Below, in pieces: positions 4,168-60,749 of a DNA stretch of 64,000 nt. Position numbers and translations under genes: made by a program. Each line of letters starts with the position of its first letter. Within the stretch, counting starts at the first letter, position 1. The notes under the pieces were generated by a model. It saw nothing but the letters and a program-made list of their open reading frames with translations. It was not told the DNA's origin and did no database searches. The DNA lies in IMG/VR virus record IMGVR_UViG_3300049793_000366, positions 434,001 through 498,000 of that record. One strand, written 5' to 3'.

Positions 4168-4611
4168 ATGGATTATAAAGCCTACTATGCTAATTGTGGT
4201 TCTGAAAGGGAATATCCATATGATATACCGACATTAGAAGTTCTTGAATCTGATTCAGAATACATGATGTCTGTGTTCAAAGAAGTTGTACACAAGGTAG
4301 TTTTTAATGTGTGTGATGATACGGATTACAGTGATAGATTGCGTGATCCTCGATTTATGGCTACTAAGTTTTTTGGATTTACGGAGTCAATTCGCGGAGT
4401 AGCATTTATAAAATATTATAAGAAAGTAAAAAAAGAGGATAGATGGTTTATGGATTTCGTTAAAGATTTCGTTACCGTATATAAACCTAAAATAAGTAAG
4501 GATGAAAATGGCGAAACTATTCACGTAATTGATAGCGACCCAGTGAAGATACTAACACATCTTAAAGCATACAAGAGAGATATAGAATTAAAAACATTAC
4601 TAAATGAATAA
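4168..4611 (+). CDS. hypothetical protein, C-tag
   Basis: Start moved to the ATG after the promoter; ends KRDIELKTLLNE. Confidence 0.75.
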   Translation: MDYKAYYANCGSEREYPYDIPTLEVLESDSEYMMSVFKEVVHKVVFNVCDDTDYSDRLRDPRFMATKFFGFTESIRGVAFIKYYKKVKKEDRWFMDFVKDFVTVYKPKISKDENGETIHVIDSDPVKILTHLKAYKRDIELKTLLNE

Positions 4612-5350
4612 AGAACAATTAATAGCAGTATTTGAAAATACGACAAGTATAATTAACTCAACACCTGGGTTTCAATTATCAATTACGTCTAAACATAACA
4701 CGAATAGTATTTCAGTACCTCGTGGTGAAACTATTGCAAACATACAGACGATTAATTCTGATACAGTTTCAGCCGCTTTAGAGTATTCAAGAAAAGGAAG
4801 AACAGCAATTTTAAATATGGCATCATTTAAGAGACCAGGTGGTGGCGTTGCCAATGGTGCTAAAGCTCAAGAAGAATGCTTATTCAGATGTTCTAACTTA
4901 TCTAAAGTTATTTCTAATGAATTCTATCCATTGGGTGTAAATGAAGGTCTATACACAAGAGATGCAGTCTTCTTCAAGGATTTTAACTACAACCAAATTG
5001 AACCATTCATGGTAGACGTTATCACGGTTGCTGCGATTAATTTATCTAAAGAAGATAACCCTAAGGAAATATTAGATTCGTATGATGTTATTATGATGGA
5101 TAAGATGCGACTGATGTTCGATATGGCGTTACAGAATGGTTGTAAAAACATTATTCTTGGTGCTTGGGGTTGTGGTGTGTTTAGCAACAACCCAGTTAAC
5201 ATCGCGAGTATGTTTGAAGAAGTTATGATGAAGCGAAAAAACAGAGTTGATTCAACATATCACGAATGTTTCGAGAATATTATTTTTGCGGTTATCAATG
5301 ACCACAATTCGGTTGGTGATAACTATGATGTATTTAGTAAATTTTTTTAA
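4604..5350 (+). CDS. TIGR02452-family macrodomain / bacterial-type poly(ADP-ribose) glycohydrolase
   Basis: LNMASFKRPGGGVANGAKAQEECLFRCSNL and ILGAWGCGVFSN motifs. Confidence 0.85.
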   Translation: MNKEQLIAVFENTTSIINSTPGFQLSITSKHNTNSISVPRGETIANIQTINSDTVSAALEYSRKGRTAILNMASFKRPGGGVANGAKAQEECLFRCSNLSKVISNEFYPLGVNEGLYTRDAVFFKDFNYNQIEPFMVDVITVAAINLSKEDNPKEILDSYDVIMMDKMRLMFDMALQNGCKNIILGAWGCGVFSNNPVNIASMFEEVMMKRKNRVDSTYHECFENIIFAVINDHNSVGDNYDVFSKFF

Positions 5351-5636: not shown

Positions 5637-5640
5637 ACAT

Positions 5641-6381
5641 ATGAGAGTATTTATTCCAAAAGGTTCACACGATTTTATTTCAAAAGAAGTTTTGAATGAG
5701 AATTGTTTTGCCGCGTTTTCTGGATTCAGTCTTATGGGTTGGGAAGTTATCTTCTATGATGCTAAAGAACAACCTGATAACTTACTTCGCTCTGATGTTG
5801 TAGTTGGTTATATAACTCATGTTAAACAAGCACTGAGAAAACTCGATATTGTACCACCAACTGAAATAGATTACCCAGAAGAATTGAATGAATACTTTGG
5901 TCGTAAGTTATGGAAGTCAACATTACACACTGTTTATAATGATGAAACAATGTGGCCAGTTTTTGTTAAACCAGTATTAGGAAAACAATTCAATGGTACA
6001 CTAGTTGAAAGTCTTACAAACTTGGTAGGTCTTGGTGCACAGGAAGACAGAGAGATATGGTGTTCAGAGCCAGTTAAGTTTGTATCTGAATATCGCTGTT
6101 TCGTTCGTTATGGGAAGGTTTTAGATGCAAGACGATATAAGGGTTCATTTAAACACATACCCGATTTTAATGTCATAGAACGTTGTATAGAAGACTTCAA
6201 AGGTCAACCAGCGGCTTATACATTAGACTTTGGTATAACAGAAGATGGTCGTTCACTTCTCATTGAAGTTAATGATGGATTTGCTTGTGGTTGTTATGGA
6301 TTACATAGCATCGATTATGCTAAATTTATGTCAGCAAGATGGCACCAAATGGTTGGCTTACCTGATCCATGTATCTTCTAA
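5641..6381 (+). CDS. ATP-grasp domain protein (DUF4343/R2K-like)
   Basis: DYPEEL..YFGRK, FVKP, SEYRCFV, AYTLDFG, LIEVNDGFACGCYG. Confidence 0.8.
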   Translation: MRVFIPKGSHDFISKEVLNENCFAAFSGFSLMGWEVIFYDAKEQPDNLLRSDVVVGYITHVKQALRKLDIVPPTEIDYPEELNEYFGRKLWKSTLHTVYNDETMWPVFVKPVLGKQFNGTLVESLTNLVGLGAQEDREIWCSEPVKFVSEYRCFVRYGKVLDARRYKGSFKHIPDFNVIERCIEDFKGQPAAYTLDFGITEDGRSLLIEVNDGFACGCYGLHSIDYAKFMSARWHQMVGLPDPCIF

Positions 6382-6635: not shown

Positions 6636-7267
6636 AAAAGCAAATTTTAACAATCAACGCACAATCTTTTGTGGATGTAATTACAAATAGTTCATCTGAA
6701 TTATTTATTTGTAATACTGACAAATCTATTGATTTAGTTAATGAAATATTACAGGAGTTACTCAATGGTTATGTTGAGAGAAATGGTGGTGGTCCATCAT
6801 TCTCAGATTGCTTTGGTGCAATTGCTATCGTTGGTGATAACAACCAAACTGGTACATACTTCATCGATGATTTACCATTAACTGAACAAGATGCTTTAGA
6901 AGAGCGTAGAAAGGAAATAATCAAGGCACAGATTATCCGTGAGCTTGAGAAGGATCCATCTTGGGATAAAAAGAATTGGCAAGAAAGAGATAAAATTTCA
7001 GTTAAGAAAACAGAAGCACAATTCCTTGAATATAAAAGAGAAGAGAAACTTGCTACGGTTACCAGTGAGAAATCAAATCTACCTGAGTGGTGGTTCACTG
7101 GTGCTATGCCTAAGAAAAACTCTTGGGATTATGATTCACCAATGAGGTGGAGAGGAATGTACAAAGGTAAAATAATCATTGAGTCAGCAACAGACAATTC
7201 AATTCCATACGATTTATTCGATGAAATTGAATCAGCGTTTAATGCTGAAAGACACCACATGGGATAA
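6632..7267 (+). CDS. hypothetical protein with N-terminal DVITNSSSELF motif
   Basis: SFVDVITNSSSELFIC near the N-terminus; coupled to the radical SAM gene. Confidence 0.75.
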   Translation: MKKQILTINAQSFVDVITNSSSELFICNTDKSIDLVNEILQELLNGYVERNGGGPSFSDCFGAIAIVGDNNQTGTYFIDDLPLTEQDALEERRKEIIKAQIIRELEKDPSWDKKNWQERDKISVKKTEAQFLEYKREEKLATVTSEKSNLPEWWFTGAMPKKNSWDYDSPMRWRGMYKGKIIIESATDNSIPYDLFDEIESAFNAERHHMG

Positions 7268-7268
7268 T

Positions 7269-8123
7269 ATGAAAGTAAGAGAATTTAAAGATAAAAATTA
7301 TAAAGCTATTTTTCATAATGGTAAAACCATTAGGATAGCTACTGATGCGTCTAAACTAATTTCAGAGTTGGACTATCCTGAATTCTACGATGTTGCTATA
7401 AACAACAAATGTAAAGCTAATTGCTCTTACTGTTATGTTAGTGCAATGAAGGGTGGTGAGAACTGGGAGAATGTAACCACTCGCATTTCAAATTTCTTTT
7501 CAAAAATGACAACCAATCAAAGACCATTTCAGGTTGCGATTGGTGGTCATGGTGAACCTACATTGCATCCCGACTTCATTCCGGTATTGGAAACATTTCA
7601 TAAATTAGGAATTGTTCCAAACTATACTACGAATGGAATGCACGTAACAAATGACATCATTGATGCTACTAAGAAATATTCTGGTGGTGTTGCTATATCA
7701 TGTCACCCACACTTAGATAAGACTTGGAAGCAAGCAGTAGTTGATTATTCAAGTGCTGGTATCAAAACAAATTTACACATCATCGTTGGTGAGAGTGGTT
7801 CAGTTGATAGATTTAAAGATATCTACGCTGAGTTTGAAAATATAGTTGACTACTTTGTTATTCTACCATACATGGCTGTTGGTCGTGCTAAGGAAATAGA
7901 AGTTAAAAATGAATGGGATAAACTATTCAAAGAATTAAAAGACTACAACAGAGGTAAGGTTGCTTTTGGTGCTTTGTTCTATCCTTATTTAAAAGATAAC
8001 GAAGAAGGTGTTAAGTATTTAGATATCTCTTTATATGAGCCAGAGTTGATGTCTGGTTACATTATGTTTGACGTAGAAGAACCTATTGTCAGAAAATCCT
8101 CATACGACTTAGAGTACAAATGA
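7269..8123 (+). CDS. radical SAM protein
   Basis: CxxxCxxC (CKANCSYC), GGHGEPTLHPDF, NYTTNG; start moved to ATG 7269. Confidence 0.9.
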   Translation: MKVREFKDKNYKAIFHNGKTIRIATDASKLISELDYPEFYDVAINNKCKANCSYCYVSAMKGGENWENVTTRISNFFSKMTTNQRPFQVAIGGHGEPTLHPDFIPVLETFHKLGIVPNYTTNGMHVTNDIIDATKKYSGGVAISCHPHLDKTWKQAVVDYSSAGIKTNLHIIVGESGSVDRFKDIYAEFENIVDYFVILPYMAVGRAKEIEVKNEWDKLFKELKDYNRGKVAFGALFYPYLKDNEEGVKYLDISLYEPELMSGYIMFDVEEPIVRKSSYDLEYK

Positions 8124-8218
8124 GTTAGTGTGATATAAAAATTTATTGTTTTAACTAAAGTTGTAAAAACTTTCACTAATGGGTTAATATAACCATTAAG
8201 AAACAATAAACTTATATC

Positions 8219-10348
8219 ATGTCACAAAACTCAGAAGATTTAAAAAAGCACCGCCTTTACTCAGAAACAGAATTCGATATCAAAGCTTCCGCATCAGACG
8301 GTGGCGAGGATGATGAAGATGAAGGTAGTATGTTTAATAAGCCAAAGGCCGACACAAAATCAAAAACCCCAGTACTCGATAATTTCGGACGCGATTTAAC
8401 AAAAATGGCTGAAGAGGGTAAGTTAGATGCCATCGTAGGAAGAGACAAAGAGATAGAAAGGGTTTCCCAGATTCTATCTCGTAGAAAGAAAAACAATCCA
8501 ATTCTTATTGGTGAGCCAGGTGTTGGTAAATCTGCTGTAGCAGAAGGACTAGCACTTCGTATTGTTCAGAAGAAAGTATCACGTTTACTTTTTAATAAAA
8601 GAGTAGTGACATTGGACTTAGGTTCTATGGTTGCTGGTACTAAATATCGTGGTCAATTCGAAGAGCGAATGAAAGCTCTTATGAATGAACTTGAGAAGAA
8701 CAAAGATGTTATTTTATTCATTGATGAAATTCATACAATCGTTGGTGCCGGTGGTGCTAGTGGTTCACTTGATGCTTCTAATATGTTTAAACCACCATTA
8801 GCTCGTGGTGAAATACAAGTAGTAGGTGCTACAACCGTAGATGAATACCGTAAGCACATTGAAAAAGATGGTGCGTTAGAAAGAAGGTTTCAAAAAGTTG
8901 TTATTGAACCAGCTACACCAGAGGAAACTCTACAAATTCTTCATAACATCAAAGATAAATATGAAGACCACCACAACGTATTCTATTCAGAAGATGCTAT
9001 TGCGGCTTGCGTTAGTTTAACTACTCGCTATATGTCTGATAGACACTTACCTGATAAAGCTATTGATGCTTTGGATGAAGTTGGTTCTCGCGTTCACATC
9101 ACTAACATAAAAGTACCTCAAGAGATACTTGACATCGAGAAAAAAATCGAAGAGATTAAAACAGAAAAGAATCGTGTTGTTAAGAATCAAAAATACGAAG
9201 AGGCTGCTAAATTAAGAGATGTTGAAAAACAATTAATCAATCAATTAGATGATGCTCGTAAGAATTGGGAAGACGACCAAAAGAACAACCGAGAGATTGT
9301 TACAGAGGAACACGTTGCTCAAGTAGTATCGATGATGACTGGTATACCAGTTACAAAGATAGGACAATCTGAAGGTAAGAAGCTAATCGATATGTATAAA
9401 GAGTTATCTGGTAAGGTAATTGGACAAGATGATGCTTTAAAGAAAATTGTTAAATCAATTCAAAGAAGCCGTGTTGGTATGAAGGATCCTAATAGACCAA
9501 TCTTCTCTGGTATGTTAATTGGAAATTCAGGAGTTGGTAAAACAGAAATGGCTAAGCAATTAGCTAAGTATATGTTTGACTCAGAAGATGCATTAATCAG
9601 ATTAGATATGTCTGAGTTCATGGAGAAAATTGATGTAACTAAAATAATTGGTTCATCTGCGGGTTATGTTGGATTCGAAGAAGGTTCAGCATTCTTAAAC
9701 AAAGTTAGGTCAAAGCCATACTCAGTAATCTTATTAGATGAAATTGAGAAAGCACATCCAGAAATCTTCAATGTATTCTTACAAATGTTAGATGATGGTC
9801 AATTAAGTGATTCACATGGTAGAAAAATTAACTTCAAGAATTGTGTTATTCTTATGACATCGAATGTCGGAACAAAAGTAGTTAAAGACTTTGGTGCTGG
9901 TGTTGGATTTGTAACTCAAGCTAAGTCAACATCATCTAATGATGATTTAAAGGGTACACTTGAAAAAGAATTGAAAAAGAAATTCGCTCCTGAGTTCATT
10001 AACCGTCTTGATGATATCATTTACTTCAAAGATTTAACTAAAGAAGATATTGGTAGAATTGTTGACATCGAATTAAATAAATCACTTAATCGTTTGAAAA
10101 CAATGGGTTACGAAGCTGTAATCGAAGAGTCTTTAAAAGAACAGTTAATTGAATCTGGTTATGATCCTAACTATGGCGCAAGACCATTGAAGAGAGCAAT
10201 TCAGAGATTAGTTGATGATGCTCTTACTGATACATTACTTGAAGAGCCAGCAGTTGGATCTACTATGAGTATGGGATTCGATAAAGAAAAGGATGAGACA
10301 GTTATTACTGTTAAGAAGCCAAAAAAGAAACCAACAAAGAATGATTAA
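8219..10348 (+). CDS. clpC: ClpC-type AAA+ unfoldase lacking the N-terminal Clp-repeat domain
   Basis: Two Walker A motifs ([16 protein letters not shown]), Walker B, short UVR-like middle domain ([10 protein letters not shown]), ClpP-docking loop GVGF. Confidence 0.92.
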
Positions 10349-10601
10349 GGATTATAAAGACTACCCAATTCCTGGGCGTAAATATAAACACTACAAAGGT
10401 GGTGTGTATGAGATAGTTTCAATGGCTACTCATACTGAAACTCAGGAAGCTATCGTTGTCTATAAGTCTTTACTATTCGGTTCTTTATATGTTAGACCAT
10501 TAGATATCTGGAATAAGGTAGCATTGGATGACGATGAAGAAGAGGTAACTCGATTCGAATTGATTGACATAGAAGATGAAGATGAATACTATTGCTTATA
10601 A
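10341..10601 (+). CDS. DUF1653-like protein
   Basis: GRKYKHYKGGVYEIV..ATHTET..VVYKSL...YVRP. Confidence 0.8.
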   Translation: MIKDYKDYPIPGRKYKHYKGGVYEIVSMATHTETQEAIVVYKSLLFGSLYVRPLDIWNKVALDDDEEEVTRFELIDIEDEDEYYCL

Positions 10602-10631: not shown

Positions 10632-10652
10632 CAATTGATTAATAAATTAAAT

Positions 10653-11054
10653 ATGGAAGAAGAAAAAATACCAACATCATTACAAGAAGCAATTGACTTT
10701 TTAATAGAAGCTGATGCTAATTTAGGAATGGGAAGCGGAATGGGAATGAGAAACAGTTGGGGGTTATGGCACGGTTCAAAACTCGCGCAATGGTTTTATA
10801 GACATCAAATATACCATGCTGATGATATGAGTGGCATCATTATGGATTCTTATAAAAGAACTAAAAATGGTGAACCAATTGAGTTAAAAGAACAAATAGC
10901 TAAGTATCATAAACACTGGGAGATAAATCATGGACCAAACCATTTAAGCGAAATGAAAGCCATGATTGTTGAAAATCTTATTAAGATGCGGGCTGAAAAT
11001 CTTGATGAAATATTGAAAGATATTAACTCTGAGGATATTGAAGGTAAAAGCTAA
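10653..11054 (+). CDS. hypothetical protein (DUF6794-like), C-tag
   Basis: GMGMRNSWGLW...YHADDMSGII; MRAENLDEIL near the end. Confidence 0.65.
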   Translation: MEEEKIPTSLQEAIDFLIEADANLGMGSGMGMRNSWGLWHGSKLAQWFYRHQIYHADDMSGIIMDSYKRTKNGEPIELKEQIAKYHKHWEINHGPNHLSEMKAMIVENLIKMRAENLDEILKDINSEDIEGKS

Positions 11055-11439: not shown

Positions 11440-12015
11440 ATGAATTCTATACTATTTACAAGGGTATCTACACCACAACAAACACACGATGAACAGGTTG
11501 ATACGCTGACTAAAATATCACAGGATAAAGGCTGGTCAATAGATACAGTATATCGCGAGGTTGGTTCTGGGCTTATTTCAGGTAATTTGAGGGAAACACT
11601 GACAACTATGTTGAAATACATACCAACAACCACAGTGTCAGTAGTAGCAGTTTCAAACATATCTAAGCTATCTTGTAGACCCAATGACGTAGAGAAATTA
11701 ATGACTTGGTTACATAGTAAGGGTATCTCAATATATGTTGCTAATCTTGATATTTTATCAATTGGTAATGAAGATATAATTAGAGAGCAAGCATTGTTAG
11801 CAGAGCAACAAATTAATCAAATGAAGAGTAATTATGTTGAGAGTAATAAACTACCAATTGGTAGAAAAGAGGGTTATAGAAAGCCTAAGATATCAATGAT
11901 GCTTGACCACAAAGATGTTGCTGATTTACTTAAGCAGGGATATTCTATACGAAAGGTTGGTGAAATGACTGGTAAAAGCACAACCACCGTACAAAAAGTT
12001 AAAAGATTATTGTGA
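11440..12015 (+). CDS. serine recombinase (resolvase/invertase family) with C-terminal HTH
   Basis: FTRVST..Q...Q catalytic motif, E.GSG, degenerate SKLSCR, C-terminal HTH GYSIRKVGEMTGKSTTTV. Confidence 0.8.
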   Translation: MNSILFTRVSTPQQTHDEQVDTLTKISQDKGWSIDTVYREVGSGLISGNLRETLTTMLKYIPTTTVSVVAVSNISKLSCRPNDVEKLMTWLHSKGISIYVANLDILSIGNEDIIREQALLAEQQINQMKSNYVESNKLPIGRKEGYRKPKISMMLDHKDVADLLKQGYSIRKVGEMTGKSTTTVQKVKRLL

Positions 12016-12284
12016 TTAACCCAACCGAAAATGAATTAGACAATTTCGTTTACTATAAGTTACAAGAAGATATAAAAAACAGTCCAAATAACGGACATAG
12101 CCCTCGTGTTAATGATGCACTTAGTGGTAAATATAAACTAATTTATTATAGATATGGTGTTGGTAGGGTCAAAGTAATGATGTACGTTGAGTCAGAAGAG
12201 AAAGAAGTAGGAGTCTGTATATTCGATGATACAGAATTTGACAATTGGTTAAGGGAAACCAAGCTCAGTCAGCTAATCAGCTAA
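12012..12284 (+). CDS. hypothetical protein, C-tag
   Basis: Ends LRETKLSQLIS. Confidence 0.75.
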   Translation: MINPTENELDNFVYYKLQEDIKNSPNNGHSPRVNDALSGKYKLIYYRYGVGRVKVMMYVESEEKEVGVCIFDDTEFDNWLRETKLSQLIS

Positions 12285-12286
12285 TA

Positions 12287-12318
12287 TTTGCAAATCCGCA
12301 TTTTAATCCGTACATTTG
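12287..12318 (+). promoter_or_regulatory. Bacteroidota-type promoter
   Basis: TTTG-N20-TACATTTG, ATG at 12323. Confidence 0.8.
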
Positions 12319-12322
12319 TAGA

Positions 12323-13045
12323 ATGGAAAAGAGACTCACAACTGAGAACTTACAATATTATGTAGACTACGATTACGACACTAGTTATTCATGTGAAGAT
12401 AGTGGTTGTGATAACGAAGGTATATGTCGTTGTGGTAGCATAGAGAATGCTGTTGTGAATCCTATAAACATATCAGAATTCGCAAAGAAGATGTATGAGT
12501 TATACAATCCACCAACAAAAGATAAAACAATACTTCGTGATAGAAAGATAAAATCTTTATTTGATTCATCAATTGAGGAAATAAATATCTATTGCATCGA
12601 TAGAATTTGTAGAGTACTCAAAGTATGGGACTTGAATAAGTGGGAGGTTAATGTATGTGGTGGTTATTACGGTGATGAAGTAGACTCAGTTAAGTTTGAA
12701 GATGTTGTAAAATTAGCAGAGAAGATAGAAGCTGTTTTAGAATTAAGCTCAGTCAAAGAAAAGATAGAGTATGTGTTAACTGTTGAGTATGGTAGCATTC
12801 TACCAGAGCTTAAAGATAAAGAATATTCATTGATAGAGATATCAAAAGATGATGTTATATTTGGTAGCGAAGGACAATACAAAAAAGTATCAACCGAAGA
12901 CCTTACTCACTATTCAAATAAAGAGTATAGTGGCATAAGAGGTTTGCTTTTACCAAAGGGTGAGAAGTTCAGACTAATCGATGGCTACCACAGAATGTTT
13001 GCCACAAATAACAAAAAGAAAATAAGAGTACTATTAGCACAATGA
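12323..13045 (+). CDS. hypothetical protein with Cys-rich N-terminus, internal C-tag and ParB/Srx-like C-terminal motif
   Basis: CEDSGCDNEGICRCG; LRDRKIKSLF; RLIDGYHR. Confidence 0.7.
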   Translation: MEKRLTTENLQYYVDYDYDTSYSCEDSGCDNEGICRCGSIENAVVNPINISEFAKKMYELYNPPTKDKTILRDRKIKSLFDSSIEEINIYCIDRICRVLKVWDLNKWEVNVCGGYYGDEVDSVKFEDVVKLAEKIEAVLELSSVKEKIEYVLTVEYGSILPELKDKEYSLIEISKDDVIFGSEGQYKKVSTEDLTHYSNKEYSGIRGLLLPKGEKFRLIDGYHRMFATNNKKKIRVLLAQ

Positions 13046-30431: not shown

Positions 30432-30661
30432 AAGCAAAATGTATTAAACCAATCATAGATGAATTCGGAGACCATCAAATGGAACTAATACTGAATGAGA
30501 ACTATGAATATAGAATAATACTGACCGATAAACCGGCTGATAGGTTCATTTATAAACTCATCGTAAAAAATAAAGAATATTCATTAACAACAGAGTATTT
30601 CGATAGATATCTACTCGACATAACCATTCATAGAGATAACCAACTCGATACACTATTATGA
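30428..30661 (+). CDS. CxC-family small protein, C-tag
   Basis: MKAKCIK...FDRYL...HRDNQLDTLL. Confidence 0.8.
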   Translation: MKAKCIKPIIDEFGDHQMELILNENYEYRIILTDKPADRFIYKLIVKNKEYSLTTEYFDRYLLDITIHRDNQLDTLL

Positions 30662-30927
30662 GCAAGAAAGAAGAAATATCACTCATCTGTATAGAAGATA
30701 TTGTAGACCTGTTCACCAAAGTCGCACAGTTTAAGAAAGGCATAACCTACAAAGCATTCTTAGACCCACTACACATTGTCTACATCTATAATGAATCAGG
30801 CGCACTCTTCCAAAAGTATAACCTGATGAATACCTATGAACACGATGAATATACAAAACACTTCGAGATACCCTGGAGACACCGCGATAATAAAATAAAC
30901 AATATATTGGAAGAACATGGGAACTGA
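30658..30927 (+). CDS. CxC-family small protein, C-tag
   Basis: LICIED...KGITY...HRDNKINNIL. Confidence 0.8.
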   Translation: MSKKEEISLICIEDIVDLFTKVAQFKKGITYKAFLDPLHIVYIYNESGALFQKYNLMNTYEHDEYTKHFEIPWRHRDNKINNILEEHGN

Positions 30928-32483: not shown

Positions 32484-32702
32484 ATGGGCTATATTACCAC
32501 CGTCATATGTACCGAAACTGTTAAGAATATTACCATAGAGTATAAGAAAGGTCAACACTATGAAGCATACTTCTACCTCGATAAAGTTAGTATCAACCAT
32601 AACAATACCTCGATAGAATATGAATGTGATGAATTTTTTAAAGAACACTTCAAACCACTCTATAAACACCGAGATAATCAAATCAATAACATATTAGATT
32701 AA
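32484..32702 (+). CDS. CxC-family small protein, C-tag
   Basis: VICTET...KGQHYE...FKEHF...HRDNQINNIL. Confidence 0.8.
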   Translation: MGYITTVICTETVKNITIEYKKGQHYEAYFYLDKVSINHNNTSIEYECDEFFKEHFKPLYKHRDNQINNILD

Positions 32703-33022
32703 TGTACACCGAAGAAGAATTAGAATATACCTGGCAAAACTATCATAAGAATCAAAAACATTGGTTCAAATGTATATGTATAAAATCATTCGGTATATAC
32801 GAAGCCGGTAACATATATGAATATAACATAAACAAAACAAATGTCACCGATACCTCAAACGGCTATAAATCATATATCAAATGGGATTTCTATGTAAAGT
32901 TCGAGAAATACCCAAAACTATACACAGATACCAATATAGTAAGATATAACCAATTCATAGAATGTATGATAGATGTATCAAAATATAGAGAGAATCAAAT
33001 CAATAACATATTAGAACAATGA
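32702..33022 (+). CDS. CxC-family protein, C-tag
   Basis: KCICIK...AGNIYEY...YRENQINNIL. Confidence 0.8.
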   Translation: MYTEEELEYTWQNYHKNQKHWFKCICIKSFGIYEAGNIYEYNINKTNVTDTSNGYKSYIKWDFYVKFEKYPKLYTDTNIVRYNQFIECMIDVSKYRENQINNILEQ

Positions 33023-36789: not shown

Positions 36790-37047
36790 ATGCCACACCA
36801 CTTCAAATGTATATGTAAGAATGAGTATCTACAATCCGGTAGGGAAGATACTTTAGTTATCTTCATACTCAATGAGATATATCTGGTGGAGAATACCGCG
36901 AGTGGGAACTACTTATTAACTGGTAATATCCGTAGTGGTGATAATATTTTGCGTGAAATAGTATCTTTAGATGATGTAGGCTTTAAACGCTATATGATGC
37001 ACATAGACGAGTATAGGGAGAATAAGTTAGAAGCATTGCTTAATTAG
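36790..37047 (+). CDS. CxC-family small protein, C-tag
   Basis: ATG from the repeat (MPH); KCICK...YRENKLEALLN. Confidence 0.8.
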   Translation: MPHHFKCICKNEYLQSGREDTLVIFILNEIYLVENTASGNYLLTGNIRSGDNILREIVSLDDVGFKRYMMHIDEYRENKLEALLN

Positions 37048-58383: not shown

Positions 58384-58766
58384 TATAATCCAATAACCAA
58401 TTTAAGTATTACTCGCTTATTTAAAAATTCATTAAGGTCTACCTCTTCAAATTGTTTTGGTTCTTTAAGCCATGCCATATACATACGAATCATATAGTCG
58501 TCTAAGATTCTAATTTTAACTGGTACTTCAAATTCTAAAAGCTTCTTATAAATCTTTACTACCTCTGACTTCAGTTGTGGTGTAAAGATAATCATATCCT
58601 CTTCTCTTATAGTATCTTCGAATATTACAGTGGAAGCCGGATCTACCAGGCGTATTTCTTTGATTATTTCACCAGCATTCATAATCTGGTGACCACTCAC
58701 ACTGAAATCATACTCTTCTATGAGAGTGCTTATCGCATCTGTTATGGTTTTACCTTTCTCAGTCAT
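58383..58766 (-). CDS. hypothetical protein, tandem paralog of the previous gene
   Basis: STLIEEYDF...IRLVDP...EEDMIIFT. Confidence 0.8.
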   Translation of the reverse strand: MTEKGKTITDAISTLIEEYDFSVSGHQIMNAGEIIKEIRLVDPASTVIFEDTIREEDMIIFTPQLKSEVVKIYKKLLEFEVPVKIRILDDYMIRMYMAWLKEPKQFEEVDLNEFLNKRVILKLVIGL

Positions 58767-58770
58767 GTTA

Positions 58771-58802
58771 TAAATATACGGATAATATTCCGGATTACCA
58801 AA
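58771..58802 (-). promoter_or_regulatory. Bacteroidota-type promoter with palindromic spacer
   Basis: TTTG-gtaatCCGGAATATTATCCG-TATATTTA. Confidence 0.85.
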
Positions 58803-59096
58803 TCAGAGTAATTGGGTTAATTTCCTATCACGAGTGAATTGCTCAAAGCTCAATGGTTCTACTTGGTCGTCATATACAACCATTTTAAGTATGCGCTCGT
58901 GTATTTGGTGTATTTTGATATTATTGTATTCATCATCTAATTTACCTTTGATATCAGATAATACAAATTCTGGTGGTACATCCGAATGTAGTTCAGCGAT
59001 GTGAGTAGCGATGTATAGCATATTCTCTGAGTTATACCCAGTGAATCCATATAAATAATACTTATATCTTTCTAGTGATTCTAATGTGAGACTCAT
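58803..59096 (-). CDS. hypothetical protein, C-tag (triplet member)
   Basis: LESL..Y..YL...SFEQFTRDRKLTQLL. Confidence 0.8.
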   Translation of the reverse strand: MSLTLESLERYKYYLYGFTGYNSENMLYIATHIAELHSDVPPEFVLSDIKGKLDDEYNNIKIHQIHERILKMVVYDDQVEPLSFEQFTRDRKLTQLL

Positions 59097-59356
59097 AGCA
59101 ATTTGTTTAGCTTATGGTCGCGGATAAATTGTTCATATGGTAATAGTTCCTTCTCAGTAATGATTGACTCCATTTCATTCTCAAGACTAATGAAAATATC
59201 ATGCAGTAAAAAGCTTTCTATGGTTCTGTGTTTGGCTGTTTCAATATACTTATCTATACGTATTCTCATATAATCCAATGTCTCAGGCTTATTGAACTTA
59301 TATAAGTATTCCTGATAGGCTTGTAACGATTCTAAATATGTTATCTGTGATGTCAT
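59093..59356 (-). CDS. hypothetical protein, C-tag (triplet member)
   Basis: TYLESLQAYQEYL...PYEQFIRDHKLNKLL. Confidence 0.8.
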   Translation of the reverse strand: MTSQITYLESLQAYQEYLYKFNKPETLDYMRIRIDKYIETAKHRTIESFLLHDIFISLENEMESIITEKELLPYEQFIRDHKLNKLL

Positions 59357-59619
59357 AGTATCTGGTCTAATTTATTATCACGCATGAACTCTATATAGGA
59401 TAATACTTTACCCTTTGATATGTGTATGGTATCTACTTCATATTTTAGCTTAGATATAACATCCAACATAACTATATTTGATATAGGTTGTGTCTTGATG
59501 ATGTTCATTAAGTTATTTATCTGAACACCAAGTATCATCATAGAATCAGAGTTGCTTATATCAAATAAATATTCTTGATAGGCTTTTAATGATTTCAAAT
59601 ATGTTAACTGGTCTTCCAC
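59353..59619 (-). CDS. hypothetical protein, C-tag (triplet member)
   Basis: TYLKSLKAYQEYL...SYIEFMRDNKLDQIL. Confidence 0.8.
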   Translation of the reverse strand: MEDQLTYLKSLKAYQEYLFDISNSDSMMILGVQINNLMNIIKTQPISNIVMLDVISKLKYEVDTIHISKGKVLSYIEFMRDNKLDQIL

Positions 59620-60041
59620 TACTTGTATTCAGGTTCTATTGTAGAAATTTCATCAAGTTCTTTTTTGTTTTCAACCAACCAAATATTATAAGCTTCCATA
59701 AAGTCTTTATCCTTTAAAGCTTCTTCGAGTGGAAAATCATCACCATTATCATCTACTAATGTTTCGATGTTTAAGAATGCGCGGATGAAGTTAAGGTTGT
59801 CAATACCTTCATCACTTTCCTCTAAGCAATATCCTTTGGTTAAACAAATCCACTCTTCATTATGAATGAACATATTATCACCATCGATAACTTTAAGTTT
59901 ACCTTCTGAAATCAATTCATCGAGTAAGGCACCTAAACCATGTGGTCTAAGTATGTGGCCCGGTAAGCCTTGTCCTGTTTCTTTATACACATCTACTGCC
60001 GCTTTATAAAGCTCTTGTTTTGTCATTTCTACTTGTTCCAT
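59619..60041 (-). CDS. hypothetical protein
   Basis: Coupled minus-strand ORF. Confidence 0.75.
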   Translation of the reverse strand: MEQVEMTKQELYKAAVDVYKETGQGLPGHILRPHGLGALLDELISEGKLKVIDGDNMFIHNEEWICLTKGYCLEESDEGIDNLNFIRAFLNIETLVDDNGDDFPLEEALKDKDFMEAYNIWLVENKKELDEISTIEPEYK

Positions 60042-60749
60042 TTACCAAATTTTAGGATTAATTTCTTTTTGTTGTTTAAATATATCTTGACCAACAGCTA
60101 CCCATTGGTTCCAATTCATTCTAAGTTCTTCTGGGTGATAACCAGTCGCGCTACCGTTATGTCGTGACACATACGACATGATACACTCAGCATGAATAGA
60201 GTGATGATTATATTCGTTCTCACCGCAACCACAGGCAGTGCCTCTACCGTTATTATATTCCCATACGAGTGGAATTAAACCACAGATTTTACATGGCGCC
60301 CATGCGCTTGGATTTGTCACTCGTTTGTATGCTGAGATAGCTTTATAATTCCTACGATGTTCAAGCCATACTTTCATAGACTTAAGCATACCAGCTTTCA
60401 TTTTAACATTACGCTTGGTGATGAAGTTATCAATCTCATACTTATCTGGTATAAGATTGATGAATGTATCGGCATCCATTTCTTGTATCGCCATCACATT
60501 AGAAGCAGTGATTGTAACAGAATCACCAGCAGCTTTTCTATCCTTGAAGAACCGCGCATATTTCAAATCAGTAATACTGTATAGTGTGTCTTTTTTATCA
60601 GGGCTACCACTATCACAGCCCATGAAGAATCGTTTTTCATCTTCATCAAATAAAGCAGATAATTTATTATCGCGCTGACGTTGTTTATCAGTAATCTCTA
60701 TGTAATAGAATATGTCTCTCTTGGTAGAGTAGTATAATTTATTATCCAT
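60042..60749 (-). CDS. hypothetical protein with N-proximal tag and C-terminal Zn-binding region
   Basis: QRDNKLSALF at about residue 25; PCKICG...ACGCG...WN.W. Confidence 0.75.
   Translation of the reverse strand: MDNKLYYSTKRDIFYYIEITDKQRQRDNKLSALFDEDEKRFFMGCDSGSPDKKDTLYSITDLKYARFFKDRKAAGDSVTITASNVMAIQEMDADTFINLIPDKYEIDNFITKRNVKMKAGMLKSMKVWLEHRRNYKAISAYKRVTNPSAWAPCKICGLIPLVWEYNNGRGTACGCGENEYNHHSIHAECIMSYVSRHNGSATGYHPEELRMNWNQWVAVGQDIFKQQKEINPKIW

What the first reader, a model, noticed from the sequence alone, without database searches (positions are those of the whole stretch)
8219..10348. Phage ClpC lacking its N-terminal domain but retaining the ClpP-docking loop
Seen: the protein reaches [14 protein letters not shown] after only ~45 residues (including an acidic stretch), so the Clp-repeat N-domain is absent. 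Both AAA+ modules, the short middle domain and the GVGF loop are present. Established: the N-domain binds adaptors and substrates, and the IGF-type loop docks ClpP. Inference: an adaptor-independent or re-specified unfoldase that hijacks ClpP or forms mixed hexamers with host ClpC. It is the obvious in-window candidate reader of the C-tag.
Basis: partly seen in the sequence, partly recalled or inferred. Interest (0 to 1): 0.62.

Follow-up and report, generated by a model that had tools for sequence, protein, structure and literature searches.

The report
Megaphage ClpC unfoldase without N-domain
A roughly 0.5-0.7 Mb phage of Bacteroidota carries a working-looking ClpC protein-unfolding motor that has naturally lost its regulatory N-terminal domain, and the same genome carries its own ClpP protease, tmRNA and SmpB, so the phage probably runs its own adaptor-free protein-degradation machine.

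Summary
Window 8219-10348 (+) is a 709-aa ClpC with both AAA+ rings, the short coiled-coil M-domain and the GVGF ClpP loop. It has no Clp_N domain. An in-frame TAA lies three codons upstream, and no Clp_N is encoded anywhere in the 508-kb record or in two complete relatives.

It is not a one-off truncation. About 700-aa N-less ClpCs form one well-supported clade nested in Bacteroidota ClpC, and every catalytic motif is invariant. I found them only on viral or huge-phage contigs. None turned up in 401 Bacteroidota genomes, whose ClpCs have open frames of about 841-975 aa.

The first 46 residues are the retained, disordered N-domain/D1 linker.

The phage does not need to hijack host ClpP. It encodes a true ClpP, plus tmRNA and SmpB, and no other Clp ATPase.

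Published work on engineered S. aureus deltaN-ClpC shows that N-domain loss allows adaptor-free ClpP binding. Combined with an M-domain mutation, it also allows SsrA-tag degradation.

The "C-tag" is real: a modular C-terminal motif on 9-15% of ORFs. Its link to ClpC is untested and only weakly supported, because other phages carrying an N-less ClpC lack the motif.

Verdict: a new natural variant of a known kind, of moderate interest.

The parts
8219..10348 (+). Gene for the N-domain-less ClpC (709 aa, protein P0001)
   Evidence: ORF list and translation. Pfam, NCBIfam, PHROG and PDB matches. TAA stop.
8207..8209 (+). In-frame TAA three codons upstream of the ATG; rules out a longer N-terminus
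   Evidence: Sequence. Open frame of 712 codons.
8219..8356 (+). Residues 1-46: disordered tail, which is the retained N-domain/D1 linker (short Y-x-x / I-K-A-S patch, acidic run, then a basic K-rich stretch)
   Evidence: It aligns to the acidic/basic linker of full-length Bacteroidota ClpC and is conserved in make-up across the N-less clade. AF2 pLDDT is below 50 for residues 1-46.
8372..9106 (+). D1 AAA+ module (about residues 52-296): Walker A G98-S105 (8510-8533), pore loop K142-Y143-R144 (8642-8650), Walker B 165-173 with D169-E170 (8711-8737), Arg fingers R222-R223
   Evidence: Pfam AAA and AAA_lid_9. Motifs invariant in 34-40 N-less homologues.
9119..9286 (+). Short ClpC-type M-domain (residues 301-356, two helices). 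The aromatic tip residue Y326 (9194-9196) aligns with S. aureus F436.
   Evidence: UVR match 307-339. Helices 301-322 and 326-356 in the AF2 model. Y326 invariant. Alignment to S. aureus ClpC. ClpB-type long M-domain absent.
9368..10249 (+). D2 AAA+ module plus small domain (about residues 384-677): Walker A G435-T442 (9521-9544), pore loop G482-Y483-V484-G485 (9662-9673), Walker B D507-E508, Arg finger R535, sensor-2 G653-A654-R655-P656
   Evidence: Pfam AAA_2 and ClpB_D2-small. Motif conservation.
9899..9910 (+). ClpP-docking loop tripeptide with its preceding Gly: G561-V562-G563-F564
   Evidence: It aligns with the ClpP loop of S. aureus ClpC. G-[VIL]-G-F is present in all 34 N-less and 12 full-length ClpCs examined and absent in ClpB-type rows. 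It lies in a flexible low-pLDDT loop, 557-574.
10293..10601 (+). Downstream DUF1653 gene. It is one of only two window neighbours (with ORF 12245-13045) that recur near an N-less ClpC elsewhere, in L170.
   Evidence: Pfam PF07866. Contexts. It is context only, with no functional link shown.

Best explanation
The gene encodes a functional class-I Clp/Hsp100 unfoldase of the ClpC type. It was captured from a Bacteroidota host lineage and has been kept by a clade of huge phages in a form that lost only the Clp_N repeat domain.

Shown here: both ATPase rings, both pore loops, the Arg fingers, the M-domain and the ClpP loop are intact and under strong purifying selection. The N-terminal 46 residues are the old inter-domain linker and are predicted disordered.

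Inferred mechanism: six subunits form a ring that docks through the G-V-G-F loops onto a ClpP tetradecamer. The most likely partner is the phage's own ClpP, with host ClpP possible. The ring then threads substrates into ClpP.

The N-domain is the part that binds adaptors and phospho-arginine marks, holds ClpC in its resting state and gates access to the pore. Without it, the phage enzyme should be independent of host adaptors, able to bind ClpP constitutively, and should select substrates directly at the pore. The retained tail or M-domain may also contribute to selection.

The phage also encodes tmRNA, SmpB and ClpP but no other Clp ATPase. The simplest substrate class is therefore proteins tagged by the phage's own tmRNA (tag AKSKTTATQVEELEIA), with other phage or host proteins possible.

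The conserved M-domain aromatic residue (Y326) means activity may still be restrained by head-to-head ring contacts, or by an unknown partner.
For: Domain architecture and absence of Clp_N.

No longer reading frame.

Conservation: the 120 best metagenome relatives are all 696-725 aa without Clp_N. There are 34 N-less rows with invariant Walker A/B, KYR and GYVG pore loops, Arg fingers, sensor 2 and the G[VIL]GF loop.

One starred N-less clade lies inside Bacteroidota ClpC. Clade members sit on IMG/VR contigs and on the 642-kb and 635-kb huge phages. Those phages are predicted to infect Bacteroidetes (PMC7162821).

Of 401 Bacteroidota genomes, 395 have a ClpC. All are at most 66% identical, with open frames of about 841-975 aa apart from one cut by a contig end.

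The phage's own ClpP has the Ser-His-Asp triad. It scores 243 bits on a ClpP model, against 78 bits (cut-off 120) on the head-maturation protease model. ClpP orthologues at 59-62% identity occur in the two complete relatives.

tmRNA and SmpB are in the same genome, and there is only one AAA_2 ATPase.

Precedent: deltaN-ClpC of S. aureus binds ClpP without an adaptor, and deltaN plus F436A degrades GFP-SsrA (PMC12583610). An engineered deltaNTD ClpC1 has been solved on ClpP1P2 (PMC11005422). Megaphage G carries ClpP, ClpX and tmRNA (PMC12484599).
Against: There are no biochemical or expression data; only one DNA run holds the sequence.

In S. aureus, deleting the N-domain alone did not give proteolysis. 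M-domain contacts formed inactive ClpC/ClpP rods, and the phage protein keeps the equivalent aromatic residue (Y326).

clpP lies about 250 kb away from clpC, so they are not in one operon.

A full tmRNA was not found in the two closest complete relatives, so tmRNA-tag reading cannot be the general reason for the N-less design.

Nothing is known about how Bacteroidota ClpC is regulated.
Confidence: 0.65

Rival explanations
1. One reading: the N-less ClpC is the dedicated reader of the C-terminal motif (phi-R-[DEN]-x-[KQ]-[LI]-x-x-[LI]-[LI], within 8 residues of the stop). This motif ends 9-15% of this phage's proteins. On this reading it marks them for timed degradation by ClpC-ClpP.
For: The motif is real and tag-like. 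There are 66 strict or 114 loose C-terminal occurrences against 11 or 40 internal ones. It sits on 107 BLAST-unrelated protein bodies. It is conserved at protein level, with Arg written by all six codons. It is also present in LR756502, which shares this ClpC and ClpP (38 of 613 ORFs). It is absent from 804 bacterial flank ORFs. ClpC is the only Clp ATPase in the genome.
Against: No test of binding succeeded (see Tried and rejected). Huge phages LR756508 and LR756504 have an N-less ClpC but essentially no motif (1 of 763 ORFs). Flanks of other clade members have 2 of 201. The two genomes that carry the motif are close kin, so this is one evolutionary observation. The motif lies 0-8 residues from the end and looks like an amphipathic helix. 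That fits a docking or targeting peptide for any hub (packaging, localisation, a chaperone) as well as it fits a degron.
Confidence: 0.12
2. It is an interference device rather than a protease motor. By lacking the N-domain it either soaks up host ClpP in inactive assemblies or co-assembles with host ClpC (60-66% identical). Either way it blunts host proteolysis or stress responses during infection.
For: S. aureus deltaN-ClpC forms long, proteolytically silent rods with ClpP through M-domain contacts. The phage protein keeps the M-domain tip aromatic residue Y326. It has high identity to Bacteroidota ClpC.
Against: A pure sink would not need translocation. Yet both pore loops, both Walker B motifs and the Arg fingers are invariant across the clade. 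The phage also maintains its own catalytically intact ClpP, which argues for a productive protease.
Confidence: 0.12
3. It acts as a ClpP-independent unfoldase or chaperone, for example to remodel or assemble components of a very large virion or replication machinery.
For: Class-I Hsp100 proteins can act without a peptidase. clpC and clpP are not neighbours in the genome.
Against: The ClpP-docking G[VIL]GF loop is invariant in all N-less members, whereas ClpB-type proteins lack it. The M-domain is of the short ClpC type, not the long ClpB type needed for DnaK-coupled disaggregation. ClpP co-occurs in all five huge-phage genomes checked, although the LR756508 match is weak at 57 bits.
Confidence: 0.08
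4. It is an artefact: a mis-called start, a decaying fragment of a host gene, or host DNA on a chimeric contig.
For: IMG/VR labels the record 'provirus'. The gene is clearly of Bacteroidota descent.
Against: A stop lies three codons upstream. The same start region is conserved in dozens of homologues. There are no frameshifts and the motifs are invariant. Phage-type neighbours continue for 64 kb to the record's end, including the phage-wide C-terminal motif family. The form was not found in 401 host-phylum genomes.
Confidence: 0.03

Closest known systems
Bacterial ClpC (B. subtilis ClpC/MecB, S. aureus ClpC, M. tuberculosis ClpC1; here specifically the ClpC of Bacteroidota)
   Same: Two AAA+ rings, a short coiled-coil M-domain with a conserved aromatic tip, a [VIL]-G-F ClpP loop and a D2-small domain. 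It is about 50% identical to the S. aureus ClpC shown in the alignment, and 60-66% identical to Bacteroidota ClpC. It is placed inside the Bacteroidota ClpC radiation.
   Different: It lacks the whole Clp_N double-repeat domain (about 140 residues). That domain binds MecA/ClpS-type adaptors and phospho-arginine and stabilises the resting state. The gene is encoded by a phage, not a cell.
Engineered deltaN-ClpC / deltaNTD-ClpC1 laboratory constructs (PMC12583610; PDB 8XON/8XOO, PMC11005422)
   Same: The boundary is practically the same. The S. aureus construct starts at linker residue 147, which aligns with residue 38 of the phage protein. These constructs bind ClpP without an adaptor.
   Different: The phage protein is a natural, conserved form. 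It keeps a longer (46-residue) acidic/basic linker tail. It also keeps the M-domain aromatic residue that the laboratory constructs had to mutate (F436A/F440A) to obtain proteolysis or stable complexes.
Phage G ClpX-ClpP plus tmRNA (PMC12484599)
   Same: A megaphage that carries its own Clp unfoldase, ClpP and tmRNA. This parallels ClpC, ClpP, tmRNA and SmpB here.
   Different: The unfoldase there is the single-ring ClpX and the two genes are adjacent. Here it is a double-ring ClpC without its N-domain, and the genes are far apart.
ClpB/Hsp104, ClpE, ClpL, ClpK/ClpG, ClpV (other class-I Hsp100s)
   Same: They share the double AAA+ core, and NCBIfam models of ClpB, ClpA, ClpV, ClpK and ClpG all match strongly.
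   Different: All these matches are below the curated cut-offs. ClpB-type rows have a long M-domain and no ClpP loop. From background knowledge, ClpE has an N-terminal zinc finger, which is not seen here because residues 1-46 contain no Cys. Also from background knowledge, ClpL, ClpK, ClpG and ClpV have their own N-domains and no ClpP coupling.

Membership tests
ClpC (class-I Clp/Hsp100 unfoldase, ClpP-coupled) | Two AAA+ modules, each with Walker A, Walker B, pore loop and Arg finger | tested here: met
   Pfam AAA and AAA_2. GEPGVGKS / DE169-170 / KYR142-144 / RR222-223 in D1. GNSGVGKT / DE507-508 / GYVG482-485 / R535 in D2. All invariant or nearly so in the clade.
ClpC (class-I Clp/Hsp100 unfoldase, ClpP-coupled) | Short single coiled-coil M-domain inserted in D1, with a conserved aromatic tip | tested here: met
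   UVR-type match 307-339. Two helices 301-356 in the AF2 model. Y326 aligns with S. aureus F436. No ClpB-length insertion.
ClpC (class-I Clp/Hsp100 unfoldase, ClpP-coupled) | ClpP-docking loop [LIV]-G-[FL] in D2 | tested here: met
   V562-G563-F564 is in the aligned position and conserved in all N-less and full-length ClpCs compared.
ClpC (class-I Clp/Hsp100 unfoldase, ClpP-coupled) | N-terminal Clp_N double-repeat domain (adaptor and phospho-arginine binding) | tested here: not met
   No PF02861 match in the protein, in the 508-kb record or in two complete relatives. The frame is closed three codons upstream. It is therefore a ClpC by descent and core, but not a canonical full-length member.
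ClpC (class-I Clp/Hsp100 unfoldase, ClpP-coupled) | Phylogenetic placement among ClpC orthologues | tested here: met
   It is nested in Bacteroidota ClpC with starred support; the N-less proteins form one clade.
ClpC (class-I Clp/Hsp100 unfoldase, ClpP-coupled) | ATP-dependent delivery of substrates to ClpP | not testable with these tools
   This needs purified proteins. The only support is indirect: co-occurrence with ClpP and the conserved loop.
ClpB / Hsp104 disaggregase | Long M-domain (about 120 residues) and no ClpP loop | tested here: not met
   Alignment with ClpB-type rows shows their roughly 60-residue longer M-domain and their missing loop. The phage protein matches the ClpC pattern. 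TIGR03346 scores 791 bits against a cut-off of 1232.
tmRNA-SmpB tagging with Clp-mediated removal (trans-translation quality control) | tmRNA with a tag reading frame, SmpB, ClpP and a Clp unfoldase in one genome | tested here: met
   tmRNA at 83.6 bits with tag AKSKTTATQVEELEIA. SmpB at 178 bits. ClpP. This ClpC is the only AAA_2 protein.
tmRNA-SmpB tagging with Clp-mediated removal (trans-translation quality control) | The unfoldase recognises the tag | not testable with these tools
   There is only precedent: SsrA is read by the Hsp100 pore, not the N-domain, and deltaN plus F436A ClpC degrades GFP-SsrA. A full tmRNA was not found in the two closest relatives.

The most novel reading that the evidence does not exclude
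The phage lineage of this window runs a private degron system. A modular C-terminal peptide (phi-R-[DEN]-x-K-[LI]-x-x-[LI]-[LI]) is attached to about a tenth of its otherwise unrelated small proteins. It is read, directly or through an unknown phage adaptor on the retained M-domain or tail, by the N-domain-less ClpC. ClpC then feeds the proteins to phage ClpP, giving programmed turnover of early proteins that is insulated from host adaptors.
Probability: 0.12. Interest if true: 0.85.

Novelty: new variant of a known kind. Interest (0 to 1): 0.55.

Why it matters
ClpC is normally held inactive and is switched on only by adaptors that bind its N-domain. Drugs and engineered mutations that bypass this control are toxic to the cell. 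Here nature has made the same cut as the laboratory deltaN constructs, and a whole clade of huge phages has kept it alongside its own ClpP.

That gives a natural system for asking three things: how an N-less ClpC is kept in check, how it chooses substrates, and why megaphages invest in their own proteolysis and trans-translation genes.

It also supplies two concrete candidate degrons to test on the bench: the phage tmRNA tag and the widespread C-terminal motif. If the enzyme is constitutively active it could also serve as an adaptor-free unfoldase tool.

Tried and rejected
- Complex prediction of ClpC residues 1-400 with a motif-bearing 85-aa protein (P0122) gave no verdict: score 0.01 and controls not run. 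It counts neither for nor against binding.
- The search for sequencing runs found one DNA run, the probable source (a soil metagenome), and no RNA. Expression could not be checked and read laying was not used.
- Synteny: the upstream ATP-grasp (R2K) and radical-SAM genes are not conserved next to N-less ClpC in other phages. Only DUF1653 and ORF 12245 recur, in one locus. An operon-based functional link was therefore dropped.
- Ten motif-bearing proteins gave no Pfam or PHROG family.
- tmRNA in relatives: LR756502 and LR745206 gave only sub-threshold tRNA-like hits. For LR756508, ARAGORN gives the short tag GRRKPLSW. For LR756504, ARAGORN found no tmRNA despite an Rfam hit. No conserved phage tag could be derived.
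- A longer N-terminus through another genetic code was rejected. The genome has a TAG-reading tRNA, but both the upstream stop and the gene's own stop are TAA.
- Two apparent 'short' bacterial ClpCs in the first tree were artefacts: one from a contig end (L104) and one from my ATG-only start rule (L123).
- Whether the 657-aa and 648-aa N-less ClpCs of LR756508 and LR756504 lost the domain independently could not be settled, because both are long branches that attract each other.
- Paper searches found no description of a natural phage N-less ClpC or of the C-terminal motif.
- The large representative-protein search was not run. The word search, the family scans and the 401-genome scan left no open question that needed it.
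Full report
**1. What is there.**

Window 8219-10348 (+) is a single open reading frame of 709 codons with an ATG start and a TAA stop. An in-frame TAA lies three codons upstream at 8207-8209, and the whole open frame is 712 codons. The protein therefore cannot be longer at its N-terminus.

Pfam finds the following domains and no Clp_N:
- a first AAA module (residues 95-206) with its lid (234-335);
- a UVR-type motif (307-339);
- the AAA_2 module (426-600);
- the D2-small domain (606-677).

The best solved relatives are ClpC of S. aureus and B. subtilis (E about 1e-212). The alignment begins at ClpC residue 147/155, directly after the N-domain. Models for ClpB, ClpA, ClpV, ClpK and ClpG all match but stay below their curated cut-offs. 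The PHROG 'ATP-dependent protease' family 4871 matches from profile position 144 onward.

**2. The genome.**

The window is positions 434001-498000 of a 507,910-bp virus record. The identical protein is also on record from a 711,805-bp contig, and a 89-90%-identical one from a 709,085-bp contig.

The nearest public phage records are LR756502 (642 kb) and LR745206 (635 kb). These are among the largest genomes of Al-Shayeb et al. 2020, which were all predicted to infect Bacteroidetes (PMC7162821).

The genome carries 61 tRNA genes. In that record:
- no Clp_N domain is encoded in any frame;
- this gene is the only AAA_2 ATPase;
- there is a ClpP gene at genome position 189419-189946;
- there is a tmRNA at 59955-60348 with tag AKSKTTATQVEELEIA;
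- there is an SmpB gene at 177791-178204.

The ClpP (P0121, 219 aa) has the Ser, His and Asp of the catalytic triad in the aligned positions. It scores 243 bits on a ClpP equivalog model, against 78 bits (cut-off 120) on the ClpP-related head-maturation protease model. It is a true ClpP, not a prohead protease.

**3. It is a family, not an accident.**

The 120 best matches in the metagenome protein collection are all 696-725 aa, 68-94% identical, and none carries Clp_N. On IMG/VR contigs the closest relatives (65-72% identity) are about 700 aa, with Walker A 83-95 residues from the start. More distant viral and all bacterial relatives are 804-913 aa, with Walker A about 200-295 residues in.

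In a tree of 125 ClpCs, all N-less proteins form one clade (SH-aLRT 96). That clade is nested inside Bacteroidota ClpC, next to Flavobacteriaceae, Weeksellaceae and Bacteroidales. Two other 'short' rows in that tree were artefacts.

In 401 Bacteroidota genomes drawn evenly across the phylum, 395 have a ClpC. The best is 66% identical, and the listed open frames are 841-975 codons apart from one cut by a contig end. The N-less form was not found in the cells searched.

A 221-kb freshwater contig that carries a member has a phage-like context of small unknown ORFs and sugar-modification genes.

Two further huge phages, LR756508 (484 kb) and LR756504 (636 kb), carry even shorter N-less ClpC-type genes of 657 and 648 aa. 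Both have the short M-domain and an [IV]-G-F loop. Whether these are separate losses could not be resolved.

**4. Anatomy and conservation.**

Across 34-40 N-less sequences the following are invariant or nearly so:
- both Walker A and both Walker B motifs;
- the D1 pore loop K-Y-R and the D2 pore loop G-Y-V-G;
- the Arg fingers and sensor 2;
- the G-[VIL]-G-F ClpP loop.

The M-domain tip aromatic residue, Y326, is also invariant. It aligns with F436 of S. aureus ClpC.

The first 46 residues are not new sequence. They align with the acidic-then-basic linker that joins the N-domain to D1 in Bacteroidota ClpC, so the deletion removed the Clp_N repeats and nothing else.

An AlphaFold2 model built on 40 family members (mean pLDDT 73.7) gives:
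- residues 1-46 without structure (pLDDT below 50);
- a two-helix M-domain at 301-356;
- flexible loops, each at pLDDT below 50, at 178-184, at the D2 pore loop (481-488) and at the ClpP loop (557-574).

**5. How it most likely works.**

Shown: an intact, selected double-ring ClpC core with a ClpP loop but without an N-domain. The genome that carries it also has its own ClpP, tmRNA and SmpB.

From the literature on S. aureus ClpC (PMC12583610):
- The N-domain stabilises the inactive resting state, lowers ATPase activity and gates the pore.
- DeltaN-ClpC forms planar hexamers and binds ClpP without MecA. However, its M-domains then pair rings head to head and the complexes are proteolytically silent.
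- DeltaN combined with F436A degrades GFP-SsrA as well as MecA-activated wild type and is toxic. The SsrA tag is read by the pore, not the N-domain.
- An engineered deltaNTD ClpC1 has been solved on ClpP1P2 (PMC11005422).

Inference: the phage enzyme is a host-adaptor-independent ClpC that docks on ClpP and picks substrates at the pore, possibly with help from the retained tail or M-domain.

The partner is most simply the phage ClpP. Its orthologues in LR756502 and LR745206 are 59-62% identical, while host ClpPs are 44-56% identical.

The phage's own tmRNA-tagged products are the most economical substrate class. Megaphage G offers a parallel with ClpX, ClpP and tmRNA (PMC12484599).

Two cautions apply. 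Y326 is retained, so M-domain pairing or an unknown partner may still control activity. A full tmRNA was not found in the two closest relatives, so tag reading is not the general reason for the design.

**6. The 'C-tag'.**

- With a strict pattern it ends 66 of 764 predicted ORFs, against 11 internal hits in 158,313 residues. With a loose pattern the figures are 114 against 40.
- The 114 carriers fall into 107 groups with no BLAST similarity once the tail is removed.
- The invariant Arg uses all six codons and the Leu/Ile positions use many, so selection is on the peptide and not on the DNA.
- No Pfam or PHROG family matches ten carriers.
- The motif also ends 38 of 613 ORFs in 400 kb of LR756502.
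- It ends 0 of 804 ORFs around bacterial ClpC genes and 2 of 201 around other N-less ClpCs.
- It ends 1 of 763 ORFs in 400 kb of LR756508 and LR756504, which also have an N-less ClpC.

The motif is thus a real and striking feature of this phage lineage. However, the N-less ClpC is much more widespread than the motif, and the two genomes that carry the motif are close relatives. The proposed link is possible but unsupported, and a docking or targeting role for some other hub fits equally well. One structure-based test gave no verdict.

**7. Comparison and novelty.**

By descent and core features this is a ClpC. It fails one defining feature of the family, the Clp_N domain, and is best called an N-domain-less ClpC.

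I found no paper that describes a natural N-less ClpC in phages or the C-terminal motif. The huge-phage paper does not mention Clp proteins in its main text.

It is a new natural variant of a well-known machine. The interest lies in its near-exact match to engineered deregulated ClpC and in the phage's self-contained set of clpC, clpP, ssrA and smpB.

**8. Limits.**

- There are no expression or biochemical data.
- About 200 kb of the probable full genome was not available.
- ORF calls for the motif counts come from a simple longest-ORF rule.
- The trees were 'quick' searches.

Noticed in passing
window, e.g. 30658-30927(+), 32702-33022(+), 36790-37047(+), 59093-59356(-), 59353-59619(-); genome-wide in G000: A modular C-terminal motif (phi-R-[DEN]-x-[KQRN]-[LI]-x-x-[LIVM]-[LIVMF], 0-8 residues before the stop) ends 66 (strict) to 114 (loose) of 764 ORFs. 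The protein bodies are otherwise unrelated. Conservation is at protein level, with no known family. It is also present in LR756502 but essentially absent from LR756508 and LR756504. Function is unknown.
   Followed up: partly
G000:C1:59955-60348(-), 177791-178204(+), 189419-189946(-) (outside the window): The phage encodes a tmRNA (tag AKSKTTATQVEELEIA), SmpB and a catalytically intact ClpP. With the N-less ClpC this makes a complete trans-translation and degradation set.
   Followed up: yes
G000:C1:121630-121702 (outside the window): Among 61 tRNA genes ARAGORN calls one with anticodon CTA, which reads TAG. This hints at stop-codon suppression in part of the infection cycle. TAG still ends 105 of 764 simple ORF calls, and the ClpC gene is bounded by TAA, so no other code was applied.
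   Followed up: no
window 4604-5350, 5638-6381, 7248-8123, 10635-11054, 11440-12015: Neighbours of clpC include a microbial PARG-like protein, an R2K-clade ATP-grasp enzyme (a family of peptide or amide ligases), a radical-SAM protein, DUF6794 and a serine resolvase. The ATP-grasp and radical-SAM pair just upstream of an unfoldase is suggestive of peptide modification, but it is not conserved beside N-less ClpC elsewhere.
   Followed up: partly
L203 2980-4953 (LR756508) and L204 2980-4926 (LR756504): Two other huge phages carry still shorter N-less ClpC-type genes (657 and 648 aa), starting about eight residues before the D1 core. Both have a short M-domain and an [IV]-G-F loop. N-domain loss may be recurrent in huge-phage ClpCs.
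   Followed up: partly
LR756502 (W01) 58622-59143, 112104-112634, 364599-365000; LR745206 (W02) 75197-75721, 123568-124089; LR756504 (W04) three places: Related huge phages carry two or three ClpP paralogues each. This raises the possibility of hetero-oligomeric ClpP1P2-type cores in phages.
   Followed up: no
whole record G000: IMG/VR classes the 507,910-bp record as a 'provirus', yet the identical ClpC is on record from a 711,805-bp contig. The record may be a trimmed version of a ~0.7-Mb phage genome rather than an integrated element.
   Followed up: no
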